A stretch of 64,000 nucleotides of DNA from Scyliorhinus canicula (GCF_902713615.1 NC_052154.1:80517072-80581071), one strand, 5' to 3'; counted from the stretch's first letter, positions 7,240-46,159 are shown. The notes: generated by a model from the sequence alone, not told the origin. Program-made: numbers and translations.

Positions 7240-7271
<32 letters not shown>

Positions 7272-7470: not shown

Positions 7471-7938
7471 TAAATAAAGGGGCAGAAGCAAGGAACAATT
7501 CTAAACATTTGAAAACCACTTGCATGGCCTCACATAGAAATGGTGTCCTACTTTGGGTCTGCACTTTAGGATGGATATCACGTCCTTGGAGGGGAGTTTT
7601 GCTGGAATGGTATCAGGCCTGAGGGACTTCAGTGATATGACGGAGACTAGCGAAACTATGATTGCGTTTCTGGCAGCAGAGACAGGATTCTGAGAGGGTT
7701 AGTTCGAGAAAACGAGGCAAAACCGTTTTCATCGATGGTTTGCTGTTACTATCTGCAATGCGCTGACTGAAAGTGTGACGGCAGAATATTGAACAGACGC
7801 CGCAGAAAGGGAATTGGAGCAATGTTTGAAAAGAAGGAAAATGAGAACTATAGGACTACATAATTCTATGATCCCCACTCCTGCCCAATCCCCACTTCAC
7901 CTTTATGGAATATAATGAAATAAACATTGTCACCCTAC

Positions 7939-7982
7939 CGGTTCCTCTCTCTGAGCTGCTTCCACAGAATTTCTATTATTAT
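7939..7982 (-). CDS. IgSF receptor gene 1, cytoplasmic exon
   Basis: Strong acceptor (ccttctctttctttcag). 44 nt, phase 1 to 0, encoding (D)NNRNSVEAAQREEP, followed by donor gtaggg. In frame with the TM exon. Confidence 0.65.
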
Positions 7983-8369
7983 CTGAAAGAAAGAGAAGGC
8001 ATGAACAACTGAATCAGCGCACCGGCGAAACCAGTATCACGCTTTCGCTGCAAAACATATTTACTGTGTATGAAGTAAGGAAACCTGAATTGTGACTGTT
8101 CAGCGGCTTCAACTGCAGTATGATGTGCATTACCGTTCATTACCACAGTGGCGCTGTATCCAGGTCAATCAAGTTGCCTTTGTGCAATGGGGTGAAAGAT
8201 GTGATAAGGAGTTGCAGCCCATTTTAACCCCGCAACATTGCAACATAAATAAAATTCGGGGGAGATATAAAGACAATTGTTCGTTCGAAATCACCCGTTT
8301 TACATTATCGCAGGAAGTCGAAATAATACTTAAAATGCTTATATTTTAAGATCTCTTCCTGCATGTACC

Positions 8370-8505
8370 TTGTGTTGCCCGATTATGTATTTTCTTTTTA
8401 TTTTATTTTCTTTTCATTGTCTTAATGATCTGTTTGAGCTGTTTGCAGAAAAATACTTTTCACTGTACCTTGGTACACATGACAATAAACAAATCCAATC
8501 TAATC
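8370..8505 (+). repeat. LINE-type 3' tail repeat
   Basis: ATGATCTGTTTGAGCTG..GCAGAAAAATACTTTTCACTGTACCTTGGTACAC.TGACAATAAACAAATCC recurs at 50860-50985. Confidence 0.7.
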
Positions 8506-8747
8506 CATTGATACTCTATGTAAAGCACACAGTGTTAATAATTCCGGGTGTAAATTAGAAGTGTATCAATCGAGTGAGTAGTACGAATTTGAAGGTGGAA
8601 TATTTGCAATTCAAAATCCACTTTACATCGTCATTTTCAACACTCAATCACATGACGCTCATTCGGTGTCAATTTTATTAATTAAAGGTGCAGAAACATG
8701 CTCCTTGATCCTCTATAATGAATCATTATTTGCCAAAAGGTTCTTAC

Positions 8748-8852
8748 CAGCTGATGCTTTCAATTTGAGTCTTGCCCAAACAATTATCAACAGTAAAATA
8801 GCCGATATGCCACCTACACGTCCAATAATGAGTGGAAGATTGGTACCAGCCC
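8748..8852 (-). CDS. IgSF receptor gene 1, transmembrane exon (Arg at the N-terminal side of the TM)
   Basis: Acceptor cctgtag, donor G|gtaag. 105 nt, phase 1/1, encoding (G)AGTNLPLIIGRVGGISAILLLIIVWARLKLKASA: a hydrophobic span followed by a basic stop-transfer segment. Confidence 0.85.
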
Positions 8853-9130
8853 CTACAGGATCAACAAATGAGTGAAATAAGAAACTGTGGAATACAACGA
8901 GATTCACACAGGAACACAGAGAGGATCACACACAGGGTGAGTTGCAAATGTGTCTCTGAGGATAATAGCCCATAATGTCAGTGGACCTCAACCACTTTCA
9001 TTTCTGTTAGCTGTAGCAGTACAATAATTATAACGTTTATCAAATGACATCAACTACACGTTAATCATGCAATTTATGGAGTAAACAAAGTCCATTGCAA
9101 AAAGGCGCAGTCAGCTTCTGACTGGACTAG

Positions 9131-9395
9131 CATGGTGGCACAGTGGTTAGCACTGCTGCTTCACATCTATAGGGACCCAGGATCGATTCCAACCTTGGAT
9201 GAATGTCTGTGTGGAGTCTGCACTTTCTCCCCATGTCTGAGCCTGTTTCTCCAGGTGCTCCGGTTTCCTCCCACGGTCCAGCAAAGATGTGCTGGTTAGG
9301 TGGATTGGCCATGATCAATGCCCGGGATTATGGGGATAGGGCGGAGGAGTCGGCCAAGATGGATTGCTCTTTTGGAGGGTTAGTGTAGACCCAAT
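9131..9395 (+). mobile_element. HE1-type V-SINE
   Basis: Head GGTGGCACAGTGGTTAGCACTGCTGC and V-SINE core. Confidence 0.85.
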
Positions 9396-9589
9396 GGGCC
9401 TTGCAATGACTTTGCACTACCGCTCCCTTCGGGCCATAATTCCACAGACCACCGACTCCCTGACAAAAAAAAGCATTGCCCCTGATAAATGGGAGGCCCC
9501 TTGTTCTTTAACTGGGTCCTCTAGTTCTAGATTCTCCCACAAGAGGAAACATTCTCTCAACCACCATCCTGTTAAGTTTTATAGGGACC

Positions 9590-9815
9590 TTTTTTCAAAA
9601 TAAATTTAGAGGACCCAATTCATTTTTTCCAATGAAGGGGAAATTTAACCTGGCCAGTCCACCTACCCTGCACATCCTTTTGGGTTGTGGAGGTGAGACC
9701 CGCACAGACATGGCAAGAATGTGCATACTCCACACAGTCAGTGACCTGGGGCCGGTATCGAATCCAGTTCCTCAACACTGTGAGACAGCTATGCTAACCA
9801 CTGCACCATCATGCC
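9590..9815 (-). mobile_element. HE1-type V-SINE
   Basis: Reverse complement of the SINE head and core (GCTAACCACTGCACCATCATGCC at about 9793-9815). Confidence 0.8.
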
Positions 9816-10512
9816 TCCTTCAGTTTTATGAGGATCTAACATTTCAAAACATTCTTCCATTCCTCTAAACTCCAATGGATACAGATCTTCTCCCACACTG
9901 ACATTGTTAAAAAACACAGAGCGTTAACAATTCCTGGTGTAATAAATTGGAAGTGTATAAATGGAGTGAATAGGTCGAATGGGAAAGTGAAACCCATAAG
10001 ATAACCTCTTCATGCGGGAATCAGTGAAGTGAAACTTCTCTGAACTGCTTCTAAAAATATTATATAATTTGATTAGAAAACAAAACTGCAAATAGTACTC
10101 CAGATGTGCACTCCAGATGAAACTTGCATTTATAAAGCACCTTCCACATAGTTAAACACCCTAAGATGTTTCACAGAGCATTATCAAACAAGGCTGAACA
10201 GCGGCTCACATAAAGTGATGTGAGGAGAGGTGGAGATAGGGGTCTGAAGGAATGAAAGTCATAAAGGGAGCCAGAGGGAGGGACATTTCTGACTTTATGG
10301 TGTAAACAGCTGAGAACAAATGATGATAATAATATTCCCATATATTGAACTTAAATGCACAGTAAATCTGTTAAAACCGATCTTTTTGTCTCTGTGTAAG
10401 TTAATTTCATTTGGCAAGAATTTGCCGAGGAATAAGCTTTCAGTTTTTGAGCGCTTCCCACATCAACCTTTCGATTCAGATCTTTTCAAAGGAAAATTCT
10501 TTCTCCTCCTGC

Positions 10513-11085
10513 TGTTATGGGCCAGGGTTTAGAGAACCCCAAAGTGTATCATGGAGTTCACCTGACCCACAACTTTTAATAGATTGTGGTATGGGGAGCA
10601 CACGGCCCACTCTACAGGTGTGGTACAGCAGAAATGAAAAAGTATTTTTTGAAGCAAAACAATGTTTATTCTCTGAACTCAACTTAACCTTTTTGAAACA
10701 AACAGTGAACATCTTAGCAACTATTATTTCAAAAACAACCCCCAAAGAATACAATAAGTAATCCGTAGGCTGTCCTTTTAACATCTAGAAGACTTAAAAA
10801 ATACCTTTAAACAGCAGCACATTAGATTTGCATTCACTACTGAGAACATTTATAATTCTGAATTCACCAAATGATCAAGAGATAGTCTTTTGATGGCAGA
10901 GAGAACAGCAGTAAACCTGCTCTATCAGGCTTCAGCTCCAACACTGAAAACAAAACTAAAACACACCCTGCAGCAAACAGCCTAAAATGGAAGTTAAAAA
11001 GCTGACAGGTAGCCCAACTCCACCTACTCTCTGACATCACTGCAGTAGCAAACACCCATTTCTTAAAGGTACTCTCACTACAGAT
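10513..11085. mobile_element. LTR-like interspersed repeat inserted in a duplicated intron segment
   Basis: Begins TGTTATGG and interrupts one copy of a local ~280-bp intronic duplication. Right end and TSD not resolved. Confidence 0.45.
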
Positions 11086-11518
11086 ATCCATTGATTCCCA
11101 TTGATGTGACATTGTGAGTAAACACACTCCACATTCTCCATGTATATTCGAGTTTGAACAGCCGGTCAGATACATGTCTAATAAATAACTACAATTTGCA
11201 GCGGTTCCCGGGCTCCTCGCTGTAAATGTTGCTAAGAACGTGAGGAGGAATAAGCTCTCCGTTTTTGAGCGGTTCCCAGATCAATCTCCAGTTTCAGATC
11301 TTTTCAGGGAGAAATTCTCTCTCACCCAGTTACAAACCAGCTTGATAATTTTAATTAATTTTAATTTTAATTCATTCAATTGATGTGACATTGGAAGTAA
11401 ATACACGCCACACTCTCTGTATATTAGAATTTGAAAAGCTGTTCAGATACATGTCTAATAAATAACTGCAGTTTGCAGCCTTTCCCGCGCTCACTGCTGT
11501 AAATGTTTCCAATCTTAC

Positions 11519-11815
11519 CTTGTGGGACGGTGTAGCTGACACTGGCTGGCACCTTAAGGGAGATATGAGATACCAGACAGGTATAAACTACTCCATTCGG
11601 TACAGGCCTTGCTTCTTTCAAAGAGCTGGAGACCTCAAAAAGACCCTCCGCCGTCTCGTTTTTCACAGTTTCTATTCCGGTCAGAATTTCCACACCATCT
11701 CTTTGCCAGGAGATTCTGAAATATTCCGGGTAAAAGGCAGCCGTTTTGCATTCGAACTTCAGAGAAATCGCTGAATTCTCTTCAATCTGAACCATTTTCA
11801 GGGGAGTTGGGGGAA
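11519..11815 (-). CDS. IgSF receptor gene 1, C1-set Ig constant domain exon
   Basis: Acceptor ttgaag, donor G|gtaag. 297 nt, phase 1/1. Sequence (V)PPTPLKM...FECKTAAFYPEYFRISWQRDG...EVSSSL...YTCLVSHISL has C1-set hallmarks (FxC, FYP, W, YxCxVxH). Confidence 0.93.
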
Positions 11816-12522
11816 CTTCAATCGAGAAAAATAACACAATTTAAATGTTATTTTTCTACCTCTGTTATGTTACATTCCTAATGTGACAATAATTATCCGT
11901 GCCATCTTTTTTCTTTAACCTCATGTTTGCAATTATATTAGAAATAATTTCATGGCGTACAAAAATTGTTTGGGTGTATTGCCAAAGGAACACAGGGAGG
12001 ATAAATCTCCCAGAGCTGGCGACAATGGGTAAATCACGGATCACTGTTCCGGCTGGAAGGTCAGCTTCTGGAATGGGAGCGTTTTTTGCTGAGAAGACCC
12101 AAGTGAGATTCCTTGTCCCAATCCATGGGAGGGAGCGTAAACAAGTCACGAACAACAAAATCCCTCACGTTTTCTCTCAGAATTGTGGCCGAACTAAACA
12201 TTCATTTTTAAAAATCCATTGTCCAAATAATTCATATGTTGCTGAACATATTTTGTTTTTTACATTTAATATTGAAAACAGGTGCGTAATTGAGTTATAC
12301 CCAATGTCTATAAAGTTTCCACACTCGATGTTACTACGTGTATAGATTAAAATCCGTGCATTAACAATGATTAAACAACATTTCTATGGTGGGTGTTTCC
12401 GATCGTGCAGCCTTTACAAAAGTTACTTTCCCCAGAGGGGGATTTGAGGCCTGAAACATATTTCTCAACAGGACAGGGCTTTATTACTAATTATATATGG
12501 GAGAGTAGATCACAACTTCCAT

Positions 12523-12775
12523 GTGGGTAGCACAGTGGTTAGCACTGTTGCTTCACAGTGCCAGGGTCCCAGGTTCGATTCCCGCTTGGGTCACTGTCTG
12601 TGCCGAGTCTGCACATTCTCCCGAGTCTGCATGGGTTTCCACCGGTTTGCTCCCGTATGTGAATTGGACATTCTGAATTCTCCCTCCGCGTACGCGAACA
12701 GGCGCTGGAATGTGGCGACTGGGGGATTTTCACAGTAACTTCATTGCAGTGTTAATGTGACAATAAAGATTCTTA
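12523..12775 (+). mobile_element. tRNA-derived SINE: HE1-like head and core with a second-family tail
   Basis: HE1 head and core, then GGAATGTGGCGACT.GGGG.TTTTCACAGTAACTTCATTGCAGTGTTAATG...ACAATAAAGATT. The same layout is on the minus strand at 46160-46395. Confidence 0.8.
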
Positions 12776-14345
12776 TTATGCATAGTGAAATCAAATACAT
12801 AATCTTCACTGCATATGTTATGTAATCCCAGGGATTTTGCCCTTCTACAATTTCATTGAGTATGTTGGGCATGGCTTGCCTGGAGAATCTTCTCTCATTT
12901 TTGATATTCCATTGCTCCACAGTCACCGTTTAACTGGAAAAATACTTAATTAGGTTTGCATTATTTTGTTGTTCATTTCAAATCGCTCAACATAGTTTCT
13001 TCATACATTTACATTTCTAAATTCTCGTAAAAGAGAATTATTAAATTAGAAACATTATTAACTTTCATGATTATGTCAGTCTATATTTCCAGCAAAGACT
13101 CAGAATTCCTCTATTATTTTCCAATGGATCTACTTTACGTTTAATATAACATGCGACAGAATCCCCCCTTGGCAGAAAGAAGCTTTCTCTCGGTCCCCTG
13201 CCCTAACCTTCTTCTGAGCATGGAGAGTGTAGAGGGAGATCATAAATTACAAATACTGGAGCCCAGGCGTTTATAGAAATGTTCGGTGATATCCAGCCTT
13301 CACTTCAGCAGTTGTGAATGAAACAGGGATAGTCCCATTGGTGTACCCCAGAGGTTCAAACTGTCCTGCGAGCTCTCGGATTGTGGTTGAATCCAGAATT
13401 GAGGGCAGGATCAACATCTCCCCTCTGACTGGGTTGTAGGATTCCTTTGTGGAAAGAGCTCGGAATTTCATACAAGTTATTAATGGACACAAATACAAAG
13501 TATAAAGTGCGGACATAGGGGCAGGGGAGATTTCGGCCGCTCCAGCCGGCTCTGCCTTCATTTAGATTATGCCTGATCTCTACCTTATCTCCATTTGTCC
13601 CATTTCGGTCCATTCTCCCGATACCCACGATTTATTTCCCTTGATTTCCATCTCAAATTTCTAACAGTTCGGCATAGAATTAATCGATTGGCAGTTTTCA
13701 GCAGGGGCCTAAAAGTAATCTTGTGTGTGGAATATTAATGTCAGGAAGTAAGAGGAGTTTCCGCTTGAATGTATACTGAAGGCACTTCATTGGGGCGGAT
13801 TGGTCTTTAACGCTGTATAAAGGAGTTTATTTAGGAGGTGTTCAAATTGTTCTGATTAAAGGTCGCAGATCTGAAGCCTTGACTCTGCCCATATGTGTTC
13901 ATAGATCCCTTGAGTCATTTTCCTGTTTAAATTATTTCAGTATATGCAATATTTTGCTTTTGTATTAAAATTGTCCCCAGTGTCGCACTTTGGCGCCATT
14001 ATTTTGCTGAGCGTGAAGCGAGCTATCTTATCCCATTGACTAACCAGAAGCAAGATTTAAGCAGTTATGCCGTTTCTTCTACCTTGGCTCAATCAGAATT
14101 GCAACCTCACTAAAAGCACTAATTGGATGAAATGTCACGAGGACGAGGAGTGGGTGAAATTGATCTTGGGCCTGAGCGCAAAACGAGCGATAAGGGATCG
14201 ACGACCGTTGAACGTCAAGGTCAATGGAAAAGAAAATTCCTCAAAGCGTAAAACAAACCGATTCCGCCAGATTTTCAACTAGTAATAAGTTAAAATTACA
14301 TAACTCGCACAAAGCCGGAAAGCGCCCTGGAACAATTACACTTAC

Positions 14346-14651
14346 CAAACACAGTGAGCTGGGAGCCACCTCCATCCCCAATCTTGACCTGTTGATGTTT
14401 GACTTTACAATAATACATTCCGGAGTCTGTAATACTCGCATTTAGAATTTCTAATGTACTCCGTCCCTTCTTTGGACTAAATCTCTTCCTGTCGTCTGGT
14501 TCCAGCAAAGATTCAGCGCCGCGTTTCCACCAAGAAACTTCAGGAGCATCTCCATATATGGTAAACGCGCAGAACATGGAAACATTGTCACCCCTGGCTA
14601 CCGTCAGGAGTTTAGGGAACTGTTCCACTTTGTTCGAAGTTACTTTGGCGG
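14346..14651 (-). CDS. IgSF receptor gene 1, V-set domain with germline-joined J-like G strand
   Basis: Acceptor ttcctag, donor G|gtaag. 306 nt, phase 1/1. Sequence KVEQFPK...GDNVSMFC...VSWW...STLEILNASITDSGMYYC...GDGGGSQLTVF has the canonical C-W-C, DSGxYYC and GxGS/TxLTV J motif in a single exon. Confidence 0.95.
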
Positions 14652-14859
14652 CTAGGAAATAAGTAGAAAAGGATGTGGACAACAACTGCATACGTCAGAG
14701 AAGTAAAATAACTAAATGGAGGAAAATTCAAAAACAATGAAGAAACACCAGCAGTGGAATTTGAGAACGGCAGCATCTATTTTTACAATGTATACAGTTG
14801 CAGATGTAAAATACCATTTAAGCTATTCTAAATCGGCAACATATAACAACTCAACATAC

Positions 14860-14914
14860 CTGACCAAATCAGGCCCAGAAGAGCCATATACTGAGCTGTA
14901 ACTCTGATCGACAT
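14860..14914 (-). CDS. IgSF receptor gene 1, leader (signal peptide) exon
   Basis: ATG at 14914-14912 encodes MSIRVTAQYMALLGLIWS, followed by G|gtatgt (phase 1). It joins the V exon in frame. The five exons total 807 nt (269 codons) without a stop. Confidence 0.85.
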
Positions 14915-16347: not shown

Positions 16348-18193
16348 AAGAGTGGCTAAGGTAAATATTGGTCCTTTAGAGGATGAGAAGGGAGTTTTAA
16401 TAAGGGGAAATGAGGAAATGGCTGAGGAACTGAACAGGTTTTTTGGGTCGGTCTTCACAGTGGAAGACACAAATAACATGCCAGCGACTGATAGAAATGA
16501 GGCTATGACAGGTGAGGACCTTGAGAGGATTGTTATCACTAAGGAGGGAGTGATGGGCAAGCTAATGGGGCTAAAGGTAGACAAGTCTCCTGGCCCCCTG
16601 GCCCTGATGGAATGCATCCCAGAGTGCTAAAAGAGATGGCTAGGGAAATTGCAGATGCACTAGTGATAATTTACCGAAATTCACTAGACTCTGGGGTGGT
16701 CCCGGTGGATTGGAAATTAGCAAACGTGACGCCACTGTTTAAAAAAGGAGGTAGGCAGAAAGCAGGAAATTATAGGCCAGTGAGCTTAACTTCGGTAGTA
16801 GGGAAGATGCTGGAATCTATCATCAAGGAAGAAATTGCGAGGCATCTGGAAAGAAATTGTCCCATTGGGCAGACGCAGCATGGGTTCGTAAAAGGCAGGT
16901 CATGCCTAACTAATTTAGTGGAATTTTTTGAGGACATTACCAGTGCAGTAGATAACGGGGAGCCGATGGATGTGGTATATCTGGATTTCCAGAAAGCCTT
17001 TGACAAGGTGCCACACAAAAGGTTGCTGCATAAGATAAAGATGCATGGCATTAAGGGTAAAGTAGTAGCATGGATAGAGGATTAGTTAATTAATAGAAAG
17101 CAAAGAGTTGGGATAAATGGGTGTTTCTCTGGTTGGCAATCAGTAGCTAGTGGTGTCCCTCAGGGATCCGTGTTGGGCCCACAATTGTTCACAATTTACA
17201 TAGATGATTTGGAGTTGGGGACCAAGGGCAATGTGTCCAAGTTTGCAGATGACACTAAGATGAGTGGTAAAGCGAAAAGTGCAGGGGATACTGGAAGTCT
17301 GCAGAGGGATTTGGATAGGTTAAGTGAATGGGCTCGGGTCTGGCAGATGGAATACAATGTTGACAAATGTGAGGTTATCCATTTTGGTAGGAATAACAGC
17401 AAACGGGATTATTATTTAAACGATAAAATATTAAAGCATGCCACTGTTCAGAGAGACTTGGGTGTTCTAGTGCATGAGTCACAGAAGGTTGGTTTACAAG
17501 TGCAACAGGTGATTAAGAAGGCAAATGGAATTTTGTCCTTCATTGCTAGAGGGATGGAGTTTAAGACTAGGGAGGTTATGTTGCAATTGTATAAGGTGTT
17601 AGTGCGGCCACACCTGGAGTATTGTGTTCAGTTTTGGTCTCCTTACTTGAGAAAGGACGTACTGGTGCTGAAGGGTGTGCAGAGGAGATTCACTAGGTTA
17701 ATCCCAGAGCTGAAGGGGTTGGATTATGAGGAGAGGTTGAGTAGACTGGGACTGTACTCGTTGGAATTTAGAAGGATGAGGGGGGATCTTATAGAAACAT
17801 TTAAAATTATGAAGGGAATAGATAGGATAGATGCGGGCAGGTTGTTTTCACTGGCGGGTGACAGCAGAACTAGGGGACATAGCCTCAAAATAAGGGGAAG
17901 TAGATTTAGGACTGAGTTTAGGAGGAACTTCTTCACCCAAAGGGTTGTGAATCTATGGAATTCCTTGCCCAGTGAAGCAGTTGAGGCTCCTTCATTACAT
18001 GTTTTTAAGGTAAAGATATATAGTTTTTTGAAGAATAAAGGGATTAAGGGTTATGGTGTTCGGGCCGGAAAGTGGAGCTGAGTCCACAAAAGATCAGCCA
18101 TGATCTAATTGAATGGCGGAGCAGGCTCGAGGGGCCAGATGGCCTACTTCTGCTCCTAGTTCTTATGTTCTTATGTTCTTATGTTCTTATGTT
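16348..18193 (+). mobile_element. Young 5'-truncated CR1 LINE nested in the hAT
   Basis: RT motifs NYRPVSLTS, QHGFVKGRSCLTNL, YLDFQKAFDKVPH, GVPQGSVLGP and FADDTK. One TAG (WIED*) plus a small frameshift near 16600. 3' tail is (TTCTTATG)n. Confidence 0.95.
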
Positions 18194-18199
18194 TGTGTT

Positions 18200-20973
18200 C
18201 GCTAGATGATTGTGCGAATCTGCCAATAATTGCTTCTACATCCAATTCATCTAACAATCCTTTTCAATGGATAGCAACATGTATGATTCCAAATTCTCCT
18301 CAGACAGCGATTTTCTTAACCTTGTCTTTATGATCTTTAGCTTTGAAAATGTCCTCTCACATTCGACTCGAGTAACTGATAATGTGCAGATGACTTTAGA
18401 AAGTTCATAAAGGTTATCATATGCCTTGTCATGAAGTCTGTTGGATGCCAGAATTTTTAGTACACACGATGGACAAGTGCTGCAAATTTTACAATTGTTG
18501 CAACTGGAATCCATATTCTCACCATCATTAAGCAATAGCTTTAATACATCAAAGTTTGAAGCAAAAGAAAAAATTCCAATATTACTTGATCTTTGCTGAT
18601 TTGTGGAAACAGCTTAATAATACCTTCCAATGCTTCATCTTCAAGGCCCTTCTCTGCAATAGTTTTAAACTTTGCTGGGTCCAAGCAGGACAAATCTTTA
18701 TACAACTGTTTGTGTTGTACAAAGCGTGATTCTAGTGACTGGACAATGCGATCCATTATTAGGTTAAACACATTTACTCGAAAATCAGCTAGAGAATCTG
18801 AGGAATTTCTTTCATCATCAATAAGCTCATCTGCCATTCTTTTCTTCTTCCTCTGCCTCTTAACTGGCAATGCTGTTTCCAACGCATCAATGTCCAATGT
18901 TTGATTTTCATCCATATTCATCTGTGAAATCCTGTCATTACATTTATTTACAAATTCCAAAGCCTTGCTGTGAACGTTATCAAATGTTCTTGTCTGTTCC
19001 TTCAACTTGTTGTAGCTGAATCTACGAAACTCCATGCAGTAAACATATCTAAACCACTTGTCTGTAGATAACTTGATAACGGGGTTGTAGTTTCAAATAT
19101 ATACAAGTAAGTAAATGCTGTCAATATGGTTTCAAACTTTAGTAGACTTTGAAGTAAAACATTTGCTTCATGTTTTGTTTTTGCATCAAACTTTTCTGAA
19201 TCTTGTATAATTGATAAGCATGTCAATAGATTTACGAAAGTACTGGCAGTGGCATCATCAAAACGTCCAAATATAGTTGTTGCTGCATTGGATTTTCCCG
19301 ACCATCTGGTCTCACCAATTAGCCTAGATGTTTTCCAACAACTTCTCTCCATACAGCCATTCTCTTGTATGATGCTTTCACAAAAATTGCTATATTCTGG
19401 AGCAAATTGAAAAAAGAAACTGCAGGCACACAACATTTTGTTGTTTCAGTTATCACCAAAGTCAAGACATGGGCACAGCACCGTATATGAACATGTTGAT
19501 CAGCCACATCAGCTATTTTACTTTGTGAACCATTATACTGGCCATGGTAGCTTGCAGTGCCATCTGTGCTATCAGATAAACATTTTTGGGGTCAATTTTA
19601 AGATGCTGTAATGTTTCAATCAATAGATCAAAAAGTCCCTGTCCTGTACCATCATTATTTGGCACAACTGAAAGTAGTCGCTCACAGATAATACCTTTAA
19701 GCACATACCGAATAATAACGCTAAACTGATCGATGGATGAATTATCTTGTGTTGAATCAACCTGAATAGAATAATATTTTGCTTGAGAAACTTCATGACT
19801 AATTCTTTCTTGCATCATATTCTTCATAATTTTGATTAACATGTTTATAGTTGTTTTACTCAGGTATGTAACAAGTCCACCACGGCCTTTACTTTGAGCC
19901 TTTCCTTGTTGCGCTAATCGTTTGATTCTTTGTTTAGACTTGTTTTGCACTGCAGAAACGTGAGCTGCCATAATGGGGTCATATTTTGCCATCAACTGCA
20001 CTGTAGCTAAAAAATTGCCATGATTCAGAAGCTCATCATCTAGAGTGTAGGCCGATTCATTTCTGTGACCTCGAAAAGGAAGTGCTTGCTTGCCTAACAT
20101 CTTTATGATGCCTTTAATCCTCATGACAATACTTCTCTGCTTCAATACTTCTTCTTTCCTTTTAATTAGTGATGCTGCAAAAAATTTATCTAAGGTGCCA
20201 TCATTAACCACACTGATATATTGCTGAGCATTTCTGATACGTGTTGTTGTCGATTCATGTAAAGTCAAGCTCTGGCTAATACGCCTGTAGTCACTAAAGC
20301 CACGTACAAAGGGTGATGGATTACAAGTGTTGGGAAACTCAAAAGCTAAGCAGTATGAACAATATAAGCATCTATTTTCTTTGTTATATGTTAGCCATTT
20401 TCTTGGGACTGAGTCATTCAAAATTTTCCTCTCATACAAACAAGCATCAAATGGCAGATCATCAAGTGGATGTTCAGCAAAAAACTGTTTTAGCTTTGCT
20501 CGTGATGGATATCGGAAGATTCCAGTAATTGATCTTTCATTTTCTTGCATAGGTTCATTTACAGGATGTGCTTCAGAAACCAAGTCATTTATGCTTGAAG
20601 GAATATCTGATTCCCTGTCACTAGTTGAAGCTATGTGTTCAGATGTTGCAACTACAGGCAGTACAGATACCGGAACAAGGAAGCCGGAAGAAATATTGGG
20701 CCTGGGTTGATTAGTAATGGATGCACTTGTATTTGTCTCTACATTCAAGGTAGCTCTTCTCTGTTCTTGTAACTCGCATGTCATTGCATCATCACCATGA
20801 GCATTGTTTCTTGCTTCTTGATTATTTGTTGCAGAACTGGATATTGATGTGGATTGTGCTTGTGGTATTATAAACTCTGTAATAGGCCTGCATCGCTTGG
20901 CTGATTCCTTCCTTTCTGCTTCTTTTTGTCCTTTGCGTTTTAGTGACCCAGATTTATGGTTTTTCTTTTCCAT
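18200..20973 (-). pseudogene. hAT transposase, broken by frameshifts
   Basis: Consecutive ORFs 19513-20973, 19319-19507, 19002-19436, 18541-19035 and 18251-18535 contain LAFRGH-like (LPFRGHRNES), YYSIQVDSTQD, HIRCCAHVLTL, ETRW and the hATC dimerization motif CERTFSKLKIIKTRLRKSL. Confidence 0.9.
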
Positions 20974-30300: not shown

Positions 30301-31297
30301 CAGAAACGGAGAATCCTGTCCAATGTTTCTTGGCTCCTGACGAATATTCACCCTTCAACCAGCATAACTATCGGAGATGATCCGCTTTTCTTTTTTTTAA
30401 TTTAGAGTAACCAATTATTTTTTTGCAATTAAGGAGCAATTTAGCACGGCCAATCCACCTACCCTGCCCATCTTTGGGTTTTGGGGGTGAGACCCACGCA
30501 GACACGGAGGGAATGTGTAAGATCCACTTTTCAAAATGTTTTTGTTTGTGGGTCTTTGTTGTGTGCAGCACGGTTGGTCTATTTTCTACATTACAACAAT
30601 GACAACATGACAATAAGTACTTAATTGGCTGCACAGCGCTTTGCGACTTCAAGTGTGGTGAAATACGCTATGTAAACAGCAGCTTTTATACTTTATTTAT
30701 TCACTGTACTATTTTCTCCCACAACAAGGCCATCTTTCTTTTTCGGAGAACATTTGACCACAGCAGGAGAGCTTTCTCAATGATAACTTTTAATAGCTGC
30801 ATATATCCGGCCATTTTCCCAAACAAACCCTCACTGGATTTAACCTATTTCAAATTGAGAGGACTGCACAGAACCAGCTGATCCTCCTGACCCTGTCAGT
30901 TTAGAGTGAGTGCTGCGAAAATAAGTCAAATGATTGATTATTCAGCGTGCTCATAAAAAGCTGCACCTCTCTAAAGTTAATTATATTTCACATTGACTTG
31001 ATGGCGCCGGTGAGTGCAGTCGTCTAACGAGCTAATTGTGTCGTTCAAAACAACGGCAGCAGCATGAGCTCGATTCGGGTTCTGGGTGAAGTAAACTTCA
31101 GAGGTTAAAAATAAGAACTTAAAAATAATTGTGTTGTTCAAAACAATTCCAGCAGCATCAGCTCGATTCGGGTTCTGACTGAAATAAACTTCAGAACTTA
31201 AATCAAATAAAAACAGAAGTGCTGGAAAAAGAACGTCAGCAGGCCTGGGAGCATCTGTGCAGCGAACAATGAGAGTGACCTTTTCGAGTCCAATAAT

Positions 31298-31412
31298 GAA
31301 ATGAAAATCGCTTATTGTCACGAGTAGGCTTCAATGAAGTACTGTGAAAAGCCCCTAGTCGCCACATTCCGGCGCCTGTCCGGGGAGGCTGGTACGGGAA
31401 TATACGGCAATA
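31298..31412 (-). mobile_element. tRNA-SINE (second family), 3' fragment
   Basis: AATGAAATGAAAATCGCTTATTGTCAC.AGTAGGCTTCAATGAAGT.ACTGTGAAAAGCCCCTAGTCGCCACATTCC recurs at 45376-45553 and 57590-57775. Confidence 0.8.
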
Positions 31413-32710: not shown

Positions 32711-32719
32711 TCAGAGAAT

Positions 32720-38260: not shown

Positions 38261-39712
38261 GAAATTATCACTTTGTTTTAGATAGGTTGCCCGACAATCC
38301 TTTATTAAATAGATTCTATGATGGTACAAACAGAAATCTGAGATTCTAATAGAAAGCTGGCAGGAAGCGACAAGGGTTAGATTTTTCACATGCTGCCCTA
38401 ATGGTTCATATAACAAATTTGCAAAGTCCGTTTTCCCCCTGGGCAGCAAATTGAAAATCTATCCTCCATGATGAAGGTAATATTCTACATCACAGATCGT
38501 AATTCAAACACAACTGGGCTTCAATTTTCTGGTATCTCCAATTGCATAATTGGAAGTTATTTTTTTTAAAAACTGGCCAACATTTGTACACAGTAAACTG
38601 TTTTTACTGTTTTCCTATGGGGAGAAAATGAGGAAGATATTGACCTTTTACTACATTGCAACCCGGCTAACAACATCCCAACCTCTTACTTTTCCTAACT
38701 GTGGAATGTAATACATTAATAATAATCTTTATTGTCACAAGTAGGCTTACATTAACGCTGCAATGAAGTTACTGTGAACAAGCCCCTAGTCGCCACATTC
38801 CGGCGCTAGTTCGGGTACACAGAGGGAGAAACAAGATGGATAACACGCCGATCTACAGCATACCGGACTGACTACACTGAGGAGGGATATGGAGCAGACT
38901 GACAACTCACCATCATCGTTTGACAGGCTCGACGCCTTATGCTTTAAAAAAATCAATTCAAGTACGATGGACGTTCTGTTTTCATGTTTTCATCAATAAA
39001 CCTGTACTTCTGCCGCGGTTTTAATCAGAAGTTCGGCTACAGATTTCTGCACCAAGAAACGACCGTATATCGATAAATACACAATTATAATAGTTGTGAT
39101 CTAGTCAGTGGACGGTGGCATTATAACTAGTATCTCCGGCTATCTGATACTTCAGAAAATATAGGGTTTGACCTTGCCTTTGTCCGACAGTGTAAGACGG
39201 CAGCTCGTTTTATATTTCTCCTAAACTATTATTGCCATTGACTTTTCAGCCCAATCGCACTGAAATACTTGGGAGAGCTGTAAAAGGTGCTTGTATGTTC
39301 TCTGTCCCGCTATTTCACAAAGTCAAAATCTATCCGCATCGCACATCAAGGTTTGAGTTCATATCCTCTGGAAAAACCCGGTTTCACAATTTTATGGGTG
39401 AAAGTTTTGCTCACAGTTGGTCAGGTTCTGGACAGTTGTTTCCGCGTGACCTGCTAAAGAAGCACAACATTCAATACTGGCCATGGATTGAAGTATCGAT
39501 TACTTTGATTAATTATTACAAACTTCCAAACCCCACCAATTTTACCCGTCCTCTTTCAAATGCCCTGGATAAGCTTCCCTTTCATATCCGCAATATACCT
39601 TCTGATATCTCACCCGGCTGAGCAACTTTGAAGGATACTTCTAAACGGGGAGGAGCATACATTTATCCTGGGCTACAATACAACGCTGGCGATTGGGAAT
39701 TGTTTTTGAATT

Positions 39713-41964: not shown

Positions 41965-42240
41965 TGGCACAGTGGTTAGCACTGCTGCTTCATAGCGCCA
42001 GGGTCCTGGGTTCGACTCCACCCTTGGGTGACTGTGGAGTTTACACTTCCTCCCCGTGTCAGCGTAGGTTTCCTCCCACAGTCCAAAGATGTGCAGGTTA
42101 GGTGGATTGGACATGCTAAATTGTCCCTTAGGGTGAGGTTACAGAGCAGGTGATAGGGCCTAAGTAGGGTAGTCTTTCAAACAGTCGGTGCAGCATCGAT
42201 GGGCCAAATGGCCTCCTTCTGTACTGTGGGGATTCTATCA
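41965..42240 (+). mobile_element. HE1-type V-SINE (part of an inverted duplication)
   Basis: SINE head directly follows TTAGTGTTAG, as does the minus-strand SINE ending at about 44525. Confidence 0.8.
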
Positions 42241-42833
42241 TTCTATTAAATAATTGGCTCTCTAACCAGCGATATATTTTTGCTCCTTTAACTACTGGGA
42301 TAATTTCCCTCTGTTTGTTGTGCGTGGTGAAATCATAAATGCTTTATTATAGAGCACTTAGAATAATAAAATCCCTGCTGTGCAGAAGGAGACTGTAAAT
42401 TCTATGATTCTATGAGACCATTTATCCACAGAGTCCGCACGACGCTCGGAAAGAGTGCCCTACCCAGGCCCCCACCCCACCCTATCGGGATCAAAAATCT
42501 GACTAACTCAGCCTTAAATATACTCAATGACCCAGCCTCTGCTTGTTTCTGGGGCAGAAATTACAAAAACGAAGGCCCCTCAGAGAGAAGAAATTCCCCC
42601 TCATAGTCATCGTGTTTTTACAGCACAAAAAGAAGCCCTTCAGCCCATCGATTTTGTTTTGACAGTAGCCTTGTATGTTTTGATATTTCAAGTGGTTATC
42701 TAAATGCTTCTTAAATGTTAAGTGTTCAAGCCTCCACTACTATTTCAGGCACTGAGTTCCAGATTCTCGTTTACTTACAAGCGATTTGATTTGCAAAGTG
42801 ACGATGCGCCGTGGTGATAATGGTGTGCCTCAC

Positions 42834-42941
42834 CTTTGACTGTACCTCGGTTTAAAATAATTCCCAACGATGACTGCCAGCACCATTATTACCAACAAAC
42901 TCGCTAAATGTCGAGACAGCAACAGGATACGTTAGCAGCAC
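42834..42941 (-). pseudogene. IgSF receptor gene 2, TM exon (frameshifted)
   Basis: Acceptor tgttgcag, donor AG|gtgagg. The hydrophobic frame ILLLSRHLASLLVIMVLAVIVGNYFKPR is 1 nt out of register with the phase-1 acceptor, which reads into TAG. A downstream acceptor (catttag) would restore the frame. Confidence 0.7.
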
Positions 42942-43206
42942 CTGCAACAGAGTATCGGAGATAAAAGGTCAAAGGACGTCAATATCAATGCCAGCAGCAA
43001 GAAAACCCAGCCACAGATGGGACCGGAAAATTGTGTAAATATATTTTTTTAATATTCAAAATAAAATGCCAACAAATGAAACAATTCGCAATCTGAATAA
43101 TGAATCCCCAATGTAATAAACGAACGGATCAAATGTTAACACGTGTCTTCGGCGTGTTAATAGTAAGCGCGCAAACCATTTTGAACGGGATGAATGAACA
43201 GGGTAC

Positions 43207-43506
43207 CTTGAAAGTTGAAATTGACTTTGGCTGGTGTCTGGAGAGAAATATGAGACACTTGACAGCTGTAGGTAGCTCTGCTGCGGAATGGCCTCGTATC
43301 TTTCAAAGTGCTGCAAACTTCATACGTTCCCACTGCGGTTCGCTGCTTCATCGTATTTATCCCAGTTACAACTTCCGCGTCGTCCTTATACCAAGTCACG
43401 TTGAGATCTTCGGGGGAAAACTCAGCTGTTTTACGCAGCAGAGGCGGGAAAGTAGATAGACGACATTTGGATTCAACCAAGCCGATTGTCAGAGGAGTGG
43501 GCCGAA
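43207..43506 (-). pseudogene. IgSF receptor gene 2, C1-set exon (first Cys replaced by Arg)
   Basis: Acceptor catccaag, donor G|gtaccc. 300 nt, phase 1/1, open. (V)RPTPLTI...LLRKTAEFSPEDLNVTWYKDD...YSCQVSHISL is clearly paralogous to 11519-11815, with CGT where gene 1 has Cys. Confidence 0.88.
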
Positions 43507-44179
43507 CTTGGATGGGAAAAGAATCTGGTTTATTGACTGAAATGTAAATTGTTTATTGTTCTATTTGTTCAGAACACGAATTTAGGACCAGGCTGTCTAT
43601 TCATTGGAACGTTTAAAAAATTTTCATGTTCAAATATTATTAAACATGTAGTTAGACATTACATGGCGCCCTTAACGGAGAAAGATATGTAATGCATTTG
43701 GTAGAATCAGAGAGTCACGGAGGGCAGATGGAGACTATTCGGCCCACCGTGTGTATGCTGGTTCCACGAGAGAGCTACGCAGTTAGTCCCATTCCCATTC
43801 TCCATAGCCTGACCAACATTCCATTTTAAATATGAACGCAATCTCCCGTGGGAATTTCTGTTTATTCCCATTACTTCAAGGTAGTGACTTCCGAACGACA
43901 GAACGTGTCGCGCAAGACAATTCCCCCCCGCCCCCCACTCTTTTGCAACTTAGCTGAAATGTGCACCCTCTGGTTCGGGACTAACGTTTGTCTGTTTATC
44001 GAGTCACACCGCTTTATCATGCTGCAGGAATCCATTTAGCTCAGTATTCTGATCTCCTCTCAGGCAGAGCAATCCACGTAGTCACATTGACATACTGAGG
44101 TAGATCCCTTTAAAACCATATAGATTCTCCACTGTTTCTGAAAATACATCCCACGTGGTAACAATTCTACGCTCCCTCC

Positions 44180-44525
44180 AGCCCTGTCAGATCAGTTGGA
44201 ACCATAGAATTTACAATGCAGAAGGAGGCCATTCGGCCCATCGATTCTGCACCGGCCTTTGGGAAGAGCACCCGATTTAAGCCCACATCTCCACCCCATC
44301 CCTGCAACCCAGTAACCCCACCTAATCTTTTTGGCCACTGAGGGGCAATTTAGAATGGCCAATCCACCTAACCTGCGCATCTTTGGACTGGGGGAGGAAA
44401 CCCGAGCACCCGGAGGAAACTCACGCAGACAAGGGGAGGACGTGCAGACTCCACACTGTAACCCGAAACCAGAATTGAAACCGGACCCTGGAGCTGTGAG
44501 GCAGCAGTGCTAACCACTGTGCCAC
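44180..44525 (-). mobile_element. HE1-type V-SINE
   Basis: Reverse-complement head, core and tail. Confidence 0.85.
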
Positions 44526-45375
44526 TAACACTAATATCACAAATTTCCCTAATAATTACTTTCCAATATTTTAATAGATTTCATTCGTTTCCAAACATCC
44601 TGATCTCCCTTGACCTGCCGGAATTTCGTTGGAAGAGCCGCGGAGACCCGAGAGAGACCTGAGACCCGCGAAGCCGAAGTTGCAGGAGTTGTAAGGAAGA
44701 ATTCACTCGTGTAGTGTTGAGATGAACCTTAATGAAGTTCCATGTGGCCGTCCTGTGCGGTGGCATTGTAAATCTACTTAGAAATGGCCTTGTGGTTTTG
44801 AAATCCTAAAGTTGCTCCAAAAGGAGAACAAAATTTCATGCCAGTTTTTACTTCATTGGAGCCACCAACGCTTCTCCGCGGCGGAAAATGGCTACGTTTG
44901 ATGTTCCATGCAAAATTGTAGGAACTTTCTAAGCAAACGTTTGAACACAAACAAACAGAGGAAACATTCCATCCAGATATCAGGCCATATCCAGCACACA
45001 TGGACTTTGTGCGATAATGGAAACCAGACCAGAGCCTCTGTTACACCCCCTCTGGTTTATATTGCCATTTAAGTTGGAATCAACTTCCTGTCAACTATTC
45101 TGCTCATCCTGCGCAAAGCCAGGTCACATGGGAGAATAGGCATTTCTGAGCAAAATGCGTTCGACTTCCTGGGGGGGGGGGCTGATTTTTCCCCCCCTGT
45201 ATTCTGCAAGATTTCACCCCTGGAGTGTCAGTGTCTTGATGCTGACACTGGATATATAAATCGAAGGCACCATTAAAGCAAACTTTTCCACCTCTTTGGT
45301 ATTTTAGCAAATAACCATTGCACACCTCACGCCTGTCCCGTCAGCATCGGGGACTCGCGGACACATGGAAAATCA

Positions 45376-45553
45376 AATGAAATGAAAATCGCTTATTGTC
45401 ACAAGCAGGCTTCAAATGAAGTCACTGTGAAAAGGCCCTAGTCGCCACATGCCGACGCCTCTTCGGGGAGGCTGTTATGGGAATTGAACTGTGCTGCTGG
45501 CCTGCTTGGTCTGCTTTCAAAGTCAGCGATTTAGCCCTGTACTAAACAGCCCT
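45376..45553 (-). mobile_element. tRNA-SINE inserted at the 3' end of the gene 2 V exon
   Basis: Head AGGGCTGTTTAGTACAGGGCTAAATCGC supplies the in-frame TAG at 45544-45542. (TTTCA)n tail. Confidence 0.85.
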
Positions 45554-45861
45554 CTGGAGCCCTGAGTCGGTTCCATTCCCAAACAATCTTCCCCCGCAGT
45601 ACACAGAGCAATAACAGCGGCCAGAATCTTGGAGGCTTACATTCAGAAATTGGAGGACGGCTGCCCCTCTTTTCCAAAGCCTATACTGTCTCTTGTTCGC
45701 TTCTTCGTCGGCCAAGAACTCACTGTCACCATGTCGCCACCAGTGAACCACGACCTCTGAATCCTCTGGAAAGACTGGGAATGTGCAATAGAGAGTAATG
45801 TTCGTTCCGCTGAGTGCAAACTTGAATGGAGGGATTTGGACAATGGTGGAATCCCCAAGAA
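45542..45861 (-). CDS. IgSF receptor gene 2, VJ-type V domain; splice donor lost, ends in a SINE-derived stop
   Basis: Acceptor ttctgatag. (V)LGDSTIVQIPP...GTNITLYC...VHWW...LQFLNVSLQDSGRCYC...FGNGT, then DSGLQRAV*. No GT donor after the J motif. Confidence 0.85.
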
Positions 45862-46037
45862 CTATCAGAAAGCCAATATAAATACAAAAATACAGATCTA
45901 ATTGCTCAAGTAAATAAAGATACAAATGGGATTTTAAAAATTTATAATTTATAAGAACTGCTGATAGAAATCCACTGATCAAATAATATGACTATACAAA
46001 AATTGTTCTTATTTCTAACCAGTAAATATTAAGATAC

Positions 46038-46077
46038 CTGTGTGTGCAATTGCCAGGATCAATACACATGACAGCAT
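46038..46077 (-). CDS. IgSF receptor gene 2, leader exon
   Basis: ATG CTG TCA TGT GTA TTG ATC CTG GCA ATT GCA CAC ACA G|gtatct encodes MLSCVLILAIAHT. Phase 1, in frame with the V exon. Confidence 0.8.
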
Positions 46078-46159
46078 GTCGGACAATGGAAGTCGAACGC
46101 ATTTTGCTCTGAAATGCCTATTCTCCCATGTGAATTGCTGGTTAGTGATAGTCCAGATA

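What the first reader, a model, noticed from the sequence alone, without database searches (positions are those of the whole stretch)
7729..46077. Tandem cluster of non-rearranging antigen-receptor-like VJ-C1-TM receptors in a shark
Two paralogous genes share the layout leader / single-exon V already carrying a J-type G strand (GDGGGSQLTV; FGNGT) / C1-set domain / TM. I found no RSS in the V-C intron, so these are germline-joined, light-chain- or TCR-like V+C1 molecules on a membrane anchor. Established: V(J)+C1 combinations outside Ig, TCR and MHC are rare (SIRP, tapasin, B7-H6), and VJ-type non-rearranging receptors such as NKp30 and shark UrIg-type genes are discussed as candidates for the pre-RAG antigen-receptor ancestor. 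Inference: this OGFOD1-linked cluster may be an undescribed innate or NK-like receptor family. Gene 1 is open over 269 codons with all phases compatible.
Basis: partly seen in the sequence, partly recalled or inferred. Interest (0 to 1): 0.85.

Follow-up and report, generated by a model that had tools for sequence, protein, structure and literature searches.

The report
Catshark SIRP-like receptor gene and pseudogene
Next to OGFOD1 the small-spotted catshark has one intact, already annotated gene and one broken copy from a large shark, ray and chimaera family of two-domain immune surface receptors, so this is a family member and not a new kind of antigen receptor.

Summary
Both genes lie on the minus strand. 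Gene 1 (14914-7930) is real. Its five exons splice into a 271-aa protein identical to a RefSeq model of Scyliorhinus canicula named "NCR3LG1-like". It has a leader, a short V-like domain with a J-type G strand, a C1 domain and a TM segment, with no RSS. Its tail stops after 26 residues, and its TM carries Arg where ITIM-tailed relatives have Cys.

Gene 2 is a pseudogene. A SINE sits inside its G strand and brings a stop codon, the C1 B-strand Cys is Arg, and its TM exon is only a candidate.

The family has more than 45 protein clusters, all chondrichthyan, under inconsistent automatic names. The ectodomain is closest to B7-H6. The four-tyrosine tail of long members aligns colinearly with a sturgeon SIRP-like tail. 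ITIM-tailed members have uncharged TMs, and six of the eleven short-tailed members with a TM carry an Arg in it. This is a paired-receptor pattern.

Gene 1 is probably an adaptor-coupled or decoy counterpart, but its expression was not shown. This scan met the family before, on other DNA of this genome (s1-240101).

The parts
14860..14914 (-). Gene 1 exon 1: start codon and signal peptide, phase-1 donor CAG|GTATGT
   Evidence: Identical to residues 1-18 of RefSeq protein P0157.
14346..14651 (-). Gene 1 exon 2: V-like (I-set sized) domain whose G strand carries the J-type motif G-D-G-G-G-S-Q-L-T-V. Cys46, Trp59 and Cys100 are present.
   Evidence: Pfam I-set 46 bits and V-set 36 bits. PDB matches cover the whole domain for TCR V-alpha/delta, VL and NAR V. 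pLDDT is at least 88 over most of the domain. Family alignment A2.
11519..11815 (-). Gene 1 exon 3: C1-set domain (Cys143, Trp157, Cys200, C-x-V-S-H)
   Evidence: Pfam C1-set. PDB phmmer hits: UrIg2, B7-H6, B7-H3, IgA, MHC II beta. Alignment A3.
8748..8852 (-). Gene 1 exon 4: short stalk, TM segment and basic anchor. The Arg231 codon CGT lies at 8818-8820, where ITIM-tailed relatives have Cys.
   Evidence: A paralogue's transcript contig laid here reads Cys-Ala...Leu instead of Arg-Val...Ser.
7930..7982 (-). Gene 1 exon 5: the cytoplasmic stub ending ...REEP, then read-through VG and TGA (7930-7932). The donor CCG|GTAGGG is intact, but no later exon is found.
   Evidence: (CDS span 6985 nt = 14914..7930).
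7301..7306 (-). First AATAAA downstream of the gene 1 stop. A possible poly(A) signal, inferred only.
   Evidence: No reads specific to gene 1 support it.
46038..46077 (-). Gene 2 leader exon (MLSCVLILAIAHT, phase-1 donor)
45554..45861 (-). Gene 2 V-like exon up to the insertion. It ends ...FGNGTDSGLQ and has C-Y-C where the family has Y-Y-C.
   Evidence: 31% identical to the gene 1 V domain.
45368..45552 (-). SINE inserted in the last codons of the gene 2 V exon. It brings an in-frame TAG (45542-45544) and pushes any donor about 190 nt away.
   Evidence: 87% identical to the copy at 57587-57773. Further partial copies at 31295-31401, 46173-46258, 38729-38815 and 12695-12766.
43207..43506 (-). 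Gene 2 C1-set exon. The B-strand Cys is replaced by Arg (CGT at 43433-43435).
   Evidence: Pfam C1-set 39 bits. It is the only non-Cys among 28 family C1 domains. 43% identical to the gene 1 C1 domain.
42834..42903 (-). Candidate gene 2 TM exon (ASLLVIMVLAVIVGNYF...), with a phase-1 compatible acceptor and an AAG|GTGAGG donor. Unverified.
   Evidence: No similarity to any family TM or tail.
1056..1277 (+). OGFOD1 exon, the neighbouring gene, convergent with gene 1
   Evidence: Pfam Ofd1_CTDD, E 1e-7. The annotated neighbour carries 2OG-FeII_Oxy_4 and Ofd1_CTDD and ends 2.4 kb from the gene 1 stop.

Best explanation
The region holds two tandem minus-strand members of a chondrichthyan multigene family of non-rearranging surface receptors. 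Each member has a leader, one short V-like domain with a J-type G strand, one C1 domain and a TM segment. Long members also have a cytoplasmic tail with four tyrosine motifs of the SIRP-alpha type, which presumably recruit SHP phosphatases and inhibit the cell. Gene 1 is an intact member, already annotated as a 271-aa protein. It has the TM module of the inhibitory members but lacks all tail exons beyond a 26-residue stub, because OGFOD1 begins 2.4 kb further on. It also has Arg231 one third of the way into the TM, where inhibitory members have Cys. Shown here: the gene structure, the family membership, and the family-wide link between ITIM tails and uncharged TMs, with TM Arg found only in short-tailed members. 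Inferred, at about 45%: gene 1 works as the activating partner of a paired-receptor set, binding the same kind of ligand as its inhibitory relatives and signalling through an ITAM adaptor (FcR-gamma, DAP12 or CD3-zeta type) held by the TM Arg. Otherwise it is a signalling-dead decoy or a decaying duplicate. Gene 2 is a pseudogene of another subfamily, disabled by a SINE in the G strand and by loss of a structural cysteine. The confidence given is for the structural and family statements; the activating mechanism alone is about 0.45.
For: The spliced gene 1 is identical to RefSeq P0157, with a CDS span of 6985 nt. Both Ig domains model at high confidence. Homologues number 17-57 per search, and all V-C1 ones are sharks, rays or chimaera. 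In the tree, gene 1 is sister to the catshark protein P0159 (99/95), and gene 2 sits with Heptranchias P0161/P0182 on a long branch of 1.01. The tail consensus is xAYAxLNL...TVYAQTKQ...KLTYAALxL...TEYAEL. It aligns across all four tyrosines with the tail of sturgeon 'SIRP-beta-1-like' P0212 (hhalign probability 92.5%, E 4.7e-7). In the TM survey, every ITIM-tailed member has an uncharged TM. Six of the eleven short-tailed members with a TM carry a TM Arg: P0157, P0186 (catshark, tail of 7 residues), and the P0159/P0084/P0158/P0163 module. The gene 1 TM and stub are 79% identical to the cloudy catshark protein P0162, which continues into the ITIM tail. A catshark RNA contig with Cys in the TM uses the same 8748|7982 junction and runs on into ...VTQGPSEQIAA, so a long-tailed paralogue is expressed. 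Gene 2 defects.
Against: Gene 1 expression is not shown. Three raw RNA runs gave no reads on its TM exon or exon 5. The only contig there differs at 6 of 107 positions and belongs to a paralogue. Word shares of 0.22-0.37 on the V exon cannot be told apart from the P0159 gene, which is 93% identical. Arg at exactly this TM position is seen only in gene 1. Together with the truncated tail it could be decay. No adaptor binding, ligand or cell type is known. Family assignment to SIRP rests on the tail and the architecture. By fold and sequence the ectodomain is nearest B7-H6, and identities to all named families are only 16-27%.
Confidence: 0.7

Rival explanations
1. Gene 1 is a truncated duplicate on its way to becoming a pseudogene. 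The duplication or a later deletion cut off the ITIM exons, the TM Cys-to-Arg change is neutral decay, and the open frame only reflects its youth.
For: No tail exon lies within 2.4 kb before OGFOD1. There are no gene-1-specific reads in four runs. The gene 1 terminal branch is longer than that of its sister P0159, 0.075 against 0.005. The neighbouring gene 2 is already dead.
Against: All five exons, their splice sites and every conserved Ig core residue are intact. Both domains fold at high confidence. Short tail plus TM Arg recurs in other annotated members. Five of the seven V differences from P0159 lie in the BC and FG loops, not in the core.
Confidence: 0.3
2. Gene 1 is a decoy or adhesion-type member, like SIRP-gamma. 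It binds the family's ligand but does not signal, and the Arg merely snorkels to the membrane surface.
For: The tail is short and has no motif. Arg231 lies in the outer third of the TM. Five other short-tailed members have no TM charge: P0167, P0168, P0173, P0072 and P0185. In a sixth, P0169, the Arg flagged lies at the outer edge of the TM.
Against: Nothing direct. The recurrence of Arg in short-tailed members fits adaptor pairing better.
Confidence: 0.15
3. The family are shark B7-H6-type ligands, as the RefSeq name NCR3LG1-like suggests. They would be displayed on target cells for NKp30-like receptors and would not be receptors on leukocytes.
For: B7-H6 is the best two-domain structural match (VIA Z 16.6, 27% identity; Foldseek ranks 1-2). 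It is also the best single-domain PDB match of the C1 exon (E 2e-7).
Against: The lead over other V-C proteins is small (Z 16.6 against 16.1 and 15.5). The G strand carries a GxG(S/T)xLxV J-type motif. The tail is colinear with a SIRP-type four-tyrosine tail. ITIM forms paired with TM-Arg forms are a receptor trait.
Confidence: 0.15
4. One reading: an undescribed antigen-receptor-like lineage unrelated to SIRP, B7-H6 or NKp30, and a relic close to the pre-RAG ancestor.
For: VJ-type G strand, C1 and TM without an RSS. V matches to TCR, IgL and NAR V domains cover the whole domain. C1 matches UrIg2. No bony-vertebrate V-C1 orthologue was retrieved.
Against: The domain lacks C'/C'' and scores best as I-set. 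There is no linkage to the MHC or to antigen-receptor loci in this window. The SIRP-type tail and the paired forms point to an ordinary regulatory receptor family.
Confidence: 0.1

Closest known systems
SIRP family (SIRP-alpha/PTPNS1, SIRP-beta, SIRP-gamma)
   Same: A non-rearranging N-terminal domain with a J-type G strand, followed by C1-set domains. Inhibitory members have a four-tyrosine tail, colinear with a sturgeon SIRP-like tail. Short-tailed members carry a basic TM residue. The family forms multigene clusters. Language-model neighbours are most often SIRP-alpha clusters (23 of 100). PMC11599192 lists SIRP among the joined-VJ IgSF members.
   Different: There is one C1 domain, not two; the only two-C1 member seen (P0155) has a near-identical duplicate. 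The V-like domain is shorter. Identity to SIRP-alpha is only 16% in Foldseek. The neighbour is OGFOD1, not the mammalian SIRP neighbourhood as I recall it. CD47 binding is unknown.
B7-H6 (NCR3LG1)
   Same: A V plus C1-like ectodomain on a TM anchor. It is the top structural match (Z 16.6, 27% identity) and the top single-domain C1 sequence match. This is the source of the RefSeq name.
   Different: The family has a J-type GxG G strand, a SIRP-type tail and paired TM-Arg forms. The margin over B7-H3, PD-L2 and butyrophilins is small.
NKp30 (NCR3)
   Same: A non-rearranging VJ-type domain. From my own knowledge, NKp30 has a TM Arg and a short tail coupling to CD3-zeta/FcR-gamma, which is what I propose for gene 1. 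A C1-less chimaera isoform of this family is named NCR3-like (P0197).
   Different: NKp30 has no C1 domain. NKp30 chains are not among the 60 best PDB matches of the V exon. No MHC linkage is seen here.
UrIg / UrIg2 (shark non-rearranging antibodies, PMC12227049)
   Same: Elasmobranch, single-exon VJ, C1 domains and no RSS. UrIg2 is a strong C1 hit.
   Different: As described in PMC12227049, UrIg and UrIg2 are V-C1-C2-C3 homodimers linked to the MHC or to the antigen-receptor complex. The present genes are V-C1-TM receptors next to OGFOD1.
Teleost NITRs
   Same: From my own knowledge, these have VJ-type domains and come in inhibitory (ITIM) and activating (charged TM) forms in multigene clusters.
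   Different: NITRs have no C1 domain and are known only from bony fish. I did not compare them here.

Membership tests
Chondrichthyan 'SIRP-alpha-like / NCR3LG1-like' V-C1 family (database family, no formal name) | Leader, V-like domain with a GxG(S/T)xLxV G strand, and a C1 domain starting VPPTPLK and containing CKTAAFYPE and CLVSH | tested here: met
   Gene 1 shares every invariant and nearly invariant column of alignments A2 and A3. It is 83% identical to P0159 and 61-69% identical to the Heterodontus members. Gene 2 shares most columns but lacks the C1 Cys and the first Tyr of YYC.
Chondrichthyan 'SIRP-alpha-like / NCR3LG1-like' V-C1 family (database family, no formal name) | Four-tyrosine cytoplasmic tail (long members) | tested here: not met
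   Gene 1 stops after ...REEPVG. No tail exon lies downstream. It therefore belongs with the short-tailed members.
SIRP | N-terminal V domain with a J-like G strand | tested here: met
   The GxG(S/T)xLxV motif is present in gene 1 and across the family. The domain is shorter than a full V.
SIRP | Two membrane-proximal C1-set domains (V-C1-C1) | tested here: not met
   Gene 1 has one C1 exon. Only P0155 shows two, and they are near-identical.
SIRP | SIRP-alpha-type tail with four tyrosine motifs in inhibitory members, and a basic TM residue with a short tail in activating members | tested here: met
   This holds at family level: tail profile against sturgeon P0212, E 4.7e-7, all four tyrosines colinear, and the TM survey. 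P0212 is itself named only automatically. The match to human SIRP-alpha is from memory.
SIRP | Orthology and shared synteny with the SIRPA/SIRPB locus | tested here: inconclusive
   The only neighbour in reach is OGFOD1. No V-C1 orthologue from a bony vertebrate was retrieved.
SIRP | Binds CD47 | not testable with these tools
   This needs a binding assay.
B7-H6 (NCR3LG1) | Ectodomain closest to B7-H6 by sequence and fold, clearly above other IgSF proteins | tested here: inconclusive
   It ranks first (Z 16.6, 27% identity; E 1.9e-15; C1 E 2e-7). Other B7, butyrophilin, SIRP, TAPBPR and TCR chains follow within one Z unit or one order of E-value.
B7-H6 (NCR3LG1) | Ligand of NKp30 | not testable with these tools
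   This needs a binding assay.
NKp30 (NCR3) | Single VJ-type domain directly on a stalk and TM, with no C domain | tested here: not met
   Gene 1 has a C1 exon that the RefSeq model splices in.
Rearranging antigen receptors (IgL, TCR) | Separate V and J segments flanked by RSS | tested here: not met
   The G strand is encoded in the V exon. No heptamer-12/23-nonamer lies in gene 1. The one RSS-like hit in gene 2 lies inside the SINE.
UrIg/UrIg2 | V-C1-C2-C3 architecture with MHC or antigen-receptor-complex linkage (PMC12227049) | tested here: not met
   Gene 1 has one C domain followed by a TM segment, and its neighbour is OGFOD1.

The most novel reading that the evidence does not exclude
Cartilaginous fish carry their own large paired-receptor system of VJ-C1 molecules, made of ITIM-tailed inhibitory forms and TM-Arg short-tailed forms. 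Its ectodomain is B7-H6-like and its tail SIRP-alpha-like. That would make it a surviving relative of the common stock of SIRP, B7-H6 and antigen-receptor chains. Gene 1 would then record a recent switch from an inhibitory to an adaptor-coupled form, through loss of the tail exons and a Cys-to-Arg change in the TM.
Probability: 0.25. Interest if true: 0.55.

Novelty: new member of a known kind. Interest (0 to 1): 0.36.

Why it matters
The genes themselves are ordinary: one is an annotated family member and the other is a pseudogene. The useful result is about the family. Sharks, rays and chimaeras share a sizeable set of non-rearranging VJ-C1 receptors whose automatic names point to six or more unrelated mammalian proteins. 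In the papers I could search I found no description of this family. Their tails and TM segments show the inhibitory/activating pairing known from SIRP, KIR and NITR. A curated phylogeny and expression map would clean up shark immune-gene annotation. It would also show whether SIRP-type paired receptors date back to the first jawed vertebrates. It does not by itself bear on the origin of RAG-rearranged receptors.

Tried and rejected
As a result the V-C1 and C1-TM junctions of gene 1 were never laid on reads.
2. I looked for tail exons of gene 1 in three ways: tblastn with 35 family proteins, a 32-nt pattern taken from the paralogue's next exon, and a scan for acceptors in phase. None gave anything.
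3. It has no in-phase acceptor and no similarity to the family.
4. The search of 1.84 billion representatives with the V exon was swamped by titin-like multi-Ig proteins, but it still gave the first ten family members.
5. Profile searches of the PDB with the V and C1 alignments were swamped in the same way by multi-domain chains, so they could not rank SIRP, NKp30 and B7-H6 domain by domain.
6. Pfam gave no significant family for the tails (SIT at 18 bits, below cut-off).
7. A formal tree against curated SIRP, NKp30, B7-H6, tapasin, IgL, TCR and UrIg sequences was not possible, because no tool hands those sequences out as usable ids and I did not type them from memory.
9. Six paper searches found no description of this family. 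The 2012 B7H6/NKp30 paper and the 2015 review are not held.
10. I could not restore an unambiguous phase-1 donor after the gene 2 SINE. The SINE's T-rich tail merges with the flank.

Full report
ANATOMY OF GENE 1. Both genes lie on the minus strand.

Gene 1 has five coding exons with canonical GT-AG borders:
- Leader, 14860-14914.
- V-like exon, 14346-14651.
- C1 exon, 11519-11815.
- Stalk and TM exon, 8748-8852.
- A 44-nt exon, 7939-7982.

The first four end in phase 1. Spliced, they give 269 codons ending ...REEP. Reading on through the fifth donor adds Val-Gly and TGA at 7930-7932.

This 271-aa product is letter for letter the RefSeq protein P0157, [quoted passage not shown]. Its coding span in assembly GCA_902713615.2 is 6985 nt, exactly 14914 to 7930.

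The next gene, 2.4 kb beyond the stop and convergent, carries 2OG-FeII_Oxy_4 and Ofd1_CTDD, so it is OGFOD1. One of its exons is at window 1056-1277.

DOMAINS OF GENE 1.
- The N-terminal exon scores I-set 46 bits and V-set 36 bits, both above cut-off.
- Its best PDB sequence matches are I-set domains (titin, DCC, contactin). TCR V-alpha/delta, light-chain V and shark NAR V match over the full length, including the G strand.
- An AlphaFold model built on a 28-sequence family alignment has pLDDT at or above 88 over most of both Ig domains. It shows strands A, A', B, C, D, E, F, G but no C'/C''. The two cysteines are only 54 residues apart.
- This is therefore a short V-like domain, not a full antigen-receptor V.
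- The G strand does carry the J-type motif. The family consensus is G-N-G-S-G-S-x-L-T-V, that is GxG(S/T)xLxV. PMC11599192 gives the J consensus as FGxGTx(L/V)xV.
- No heptamer-12/23-nonamer occurs anywhere in gene 1.
- The second exon is a C1-set domain. Its best PDB matches are UrIg2, B7-H6, B7-H3, IgA and MHC class II beta.

THE 3' END OF GENE 1. That ORF has no acceptor in phase with exon 5. It also resembles no relative's tail.

I searched the whole window with 35 family proteins and with the first 32 nt of a paralogue's next exon. Neither found a further exon. In the cloudy catshark, the TM-plus-tail part of a relative spans 23 kb. Here only 2.4 kb, partly a LINE fragment, separates the stop from OGFOD1. 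Gene 1 therefore lacks the tail exons.

GENE 2. The leader (46038-46077), the V-like exon (from 45861) and the C1 exon (43207-43506) are there. They are 31% and 43% identical to the V and C1 of gene 1. The gene is nevertheless disabled:
- The V exon reads ...FGNGTDSGLQ and then runs into a SINE. The SINE is aligned over 45552-45368 at 87% to the copy at 57587-57773, with partial copies elsewhere in the window. It brings TAG at 45542-45544.
- Relatives have two or three more codons and a phase-1 donor at this point. After the SINE I could not restore a clean donor.
- In the C1 exon the B-strand cysteine is Arg (CGT, 43433-43435). This is the only exception among 28 aligned family C1 domains.
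- The family's Y-Y-C is C-Y-C here, and the V scores below Pfam's V-set cut-off.
- In the tree, gene 2 has a terminal branch of 1.01, against 0.43-0.44 for its nearest relatives.
This is a 70-nt ORF with a usable acceptor, the right phase and a good donor, but it has no stalk and no likeness to any TM of the family. I list it as a candidate only.
- None of the catshark proteins retrieved (P0157, P0159, P0084, P0186) corresponds to gene 2.

I read gene 2 as a pseudogene.

THE FAMILY. Three searches returned 17, 25 and 57 proteins. Every V-C1 hit is chondrichthyan:
- Scyliorhinus canicula and S. torazame
- Chiloscyllium
- Hemiscyllium
- Stegostoma
- Heterodontus
- Heptranchias
- Mobula
- Hemitrygon
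- Hypanus
- Callorhinchus

Their automatic names disagree. They include SIRP-alpha-like (PTPNS1-like), SIRP-beta-1-like, NCR3LG1-like, NCR3-like, tapasin-related-like, immunoglobulin lambda-like, CD276 homolog and TCR-beta-like.

The reason shows in the fold searches. B7-H6, SIRP-alpha, TAPBPR, CD276, TCR-beta, CD80, PD-L1, butyrophilins and light chains all match at E 1e-15 to 1e-13, with 13-23% identity. In the alignment that does not rely on Foldseek, B7-H6 is first (Z 16.6, 27% identity over 188 residues) but barely ahead of the next rows.

TAILS AND MEMBRANE SEGMENTS. Long members share a tail with four tyrosine motifs, with the consensus xAYAxLNL ... TVYAQTKQ ... KLTYAALxL ... TEYAEL. 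A profile of 16 such tails aligns across all four tyrosines with the tail of a sturgeon protein named SIRP-beta-1-like, at probability 92.5% and E 4.7e-7. From memory, human SIRP-alpha has the same order of motifs. That recollection is a lead, not a test.

I surveyed the TM of about 60 members. Every ITIM-tailed member has an uncharged TM. Six of the eleven short-tailed members with a TM carry an Arg in it:
- Gene 1, with Arg231 replacing the Cys of the G-C-A-G-G motif.
- Catshark P0186, with A-I-R-C-T-V-G-G and a tail of 7 residues.
- A second TM module shared by P0159, P0084, P0158 and P0163.

This is the pattern of paired inhibitory and activating receptors.

The closest relative of gene 1, P0159, has a 93% identical ectodomain on that second, Arg-bearing module. 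The TM and stub of gene 1 itself are 79% identical to the cloudy catshark P0162, which goes on into the ITIM tail. Gene 1 thus looks like an inhibitory-type gene that lost its tail and gained a TM Arg.

EXPRESSION. One read-laying run was lost to a filter. The other, on 7000-9200, showed no reads of three raw RNA runs on the TM exon or exon 5.

It did show one contig of run X1 that covers the TM exon with 6 differences in 107 letters. Three of these turn Arg-Val...Ser into Cys-Ala...Leu. The contig uses the junction 8748|7982 and then continues into sequence that translates as VTQGPSEQIAA, the start of the ITIM tail. This is a paralogue's transcript. It proves the splice pattern and the expression of a long-tailed catshark member, but not the expression of gene 1.

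RNA-type runs hold 0.22-0.37 of the sampled words of the gene 1 V exon. The P0159 gene could account for that.

VERDICT.

What is here is one intact, annotated, short-tailed member and one dead member of a chondrichthyan SIRP/B7-H6-like V-C1 receptor family. Gene 1 most likely serves as an adaptor-coupled (activating) or decoy counterpart to ITIM-tailed relatives. A decaying duplicate remains a serious rival.

An earlier follow-up in this scan, on other DNA of the same genome (s1-240101), reached the same family assignment. My searches support it independently.

I found no paper describing the family. The UrIg papers treat different, secreted, MHC- or antigen-receptor-linked genes.

Noticed in passing
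window 45389-45429 (minus strand), inside the SINE: The SINE downstream of the gene 2 V exon contains CACAGTG, a 23-nt spacer and ACAATAAGC, which looks like a 23-RSS (2 nonamer mismatches). It belongs to the conserved SINE body, where other copies read CACAGTA, and lies about 125 nt from the coding end. I take it as chance, but it could mislead RSS scans near V exons in sharks.
   Followed up: partly
window 45124-45169 and 46088-46133: A 46-nt inverted repeat, 98% complementary, brackets the gene 2 leader, V exon and SINE. One arm contains the upstream ATG region of gene 2. This points to a local inverted duplication in the dead gene.
   Followed up: partly
window 18251-20973 (minus strand): A run of long ORFs (486, 144, 164 and 94 aa) between the two receptor genes is a broken hAT-type transposase. 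Dimer_Tnp_hAT scores E 1e-8 on 18251-18535, and DUF4371 scores weakly on 19513-20973.
   Followed up: partly
window 8748-8854 and 7939-7982, as laid in run X1: A catshark RNA contig differs from gene 1 at 6 of 107 TM-exon positions, has Cys in the TM and continues into an ITIM-type tail exon. None of the four catshark family proteins retrieved has this TM-plus-tail combination, so a long-tailed paralogue may be unannotated or was missed by the searches.
   Followed up: no
proteins P0159, P0084 (S. canicula), P0158, P0163 (Heptranchias): A second TM module, conserved between two shark orders, has an embedded Arg followed by G-I-I-V-D-H-V and a short tail ending in a shared G-K-x-R-L-x-I-S-A motif. 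A Heterodontus form (P0156) has that end without the TM. This suggests alternative TM and secreted exons in the family.
   Followed up: no
protein P0155 (Chiloscyllium plagiosum): This model has two nearly identical C1 domains in tandem and no TM. It is either a very recent exon duplication or an assembly or annotation artefact.
   Followed up: no
window 6081-7208 (+), 16352-18081 (+), 51248-52183 (+) and others: LINE reverse-transcriptase fragments (RVT_1, zf-RVT), together with several SINE families, fill most of the space between and around the genes. One LINE piece lies between the gene 1 stop and OGFOD1, where the tail exons would be expected.
   Followed up: partly
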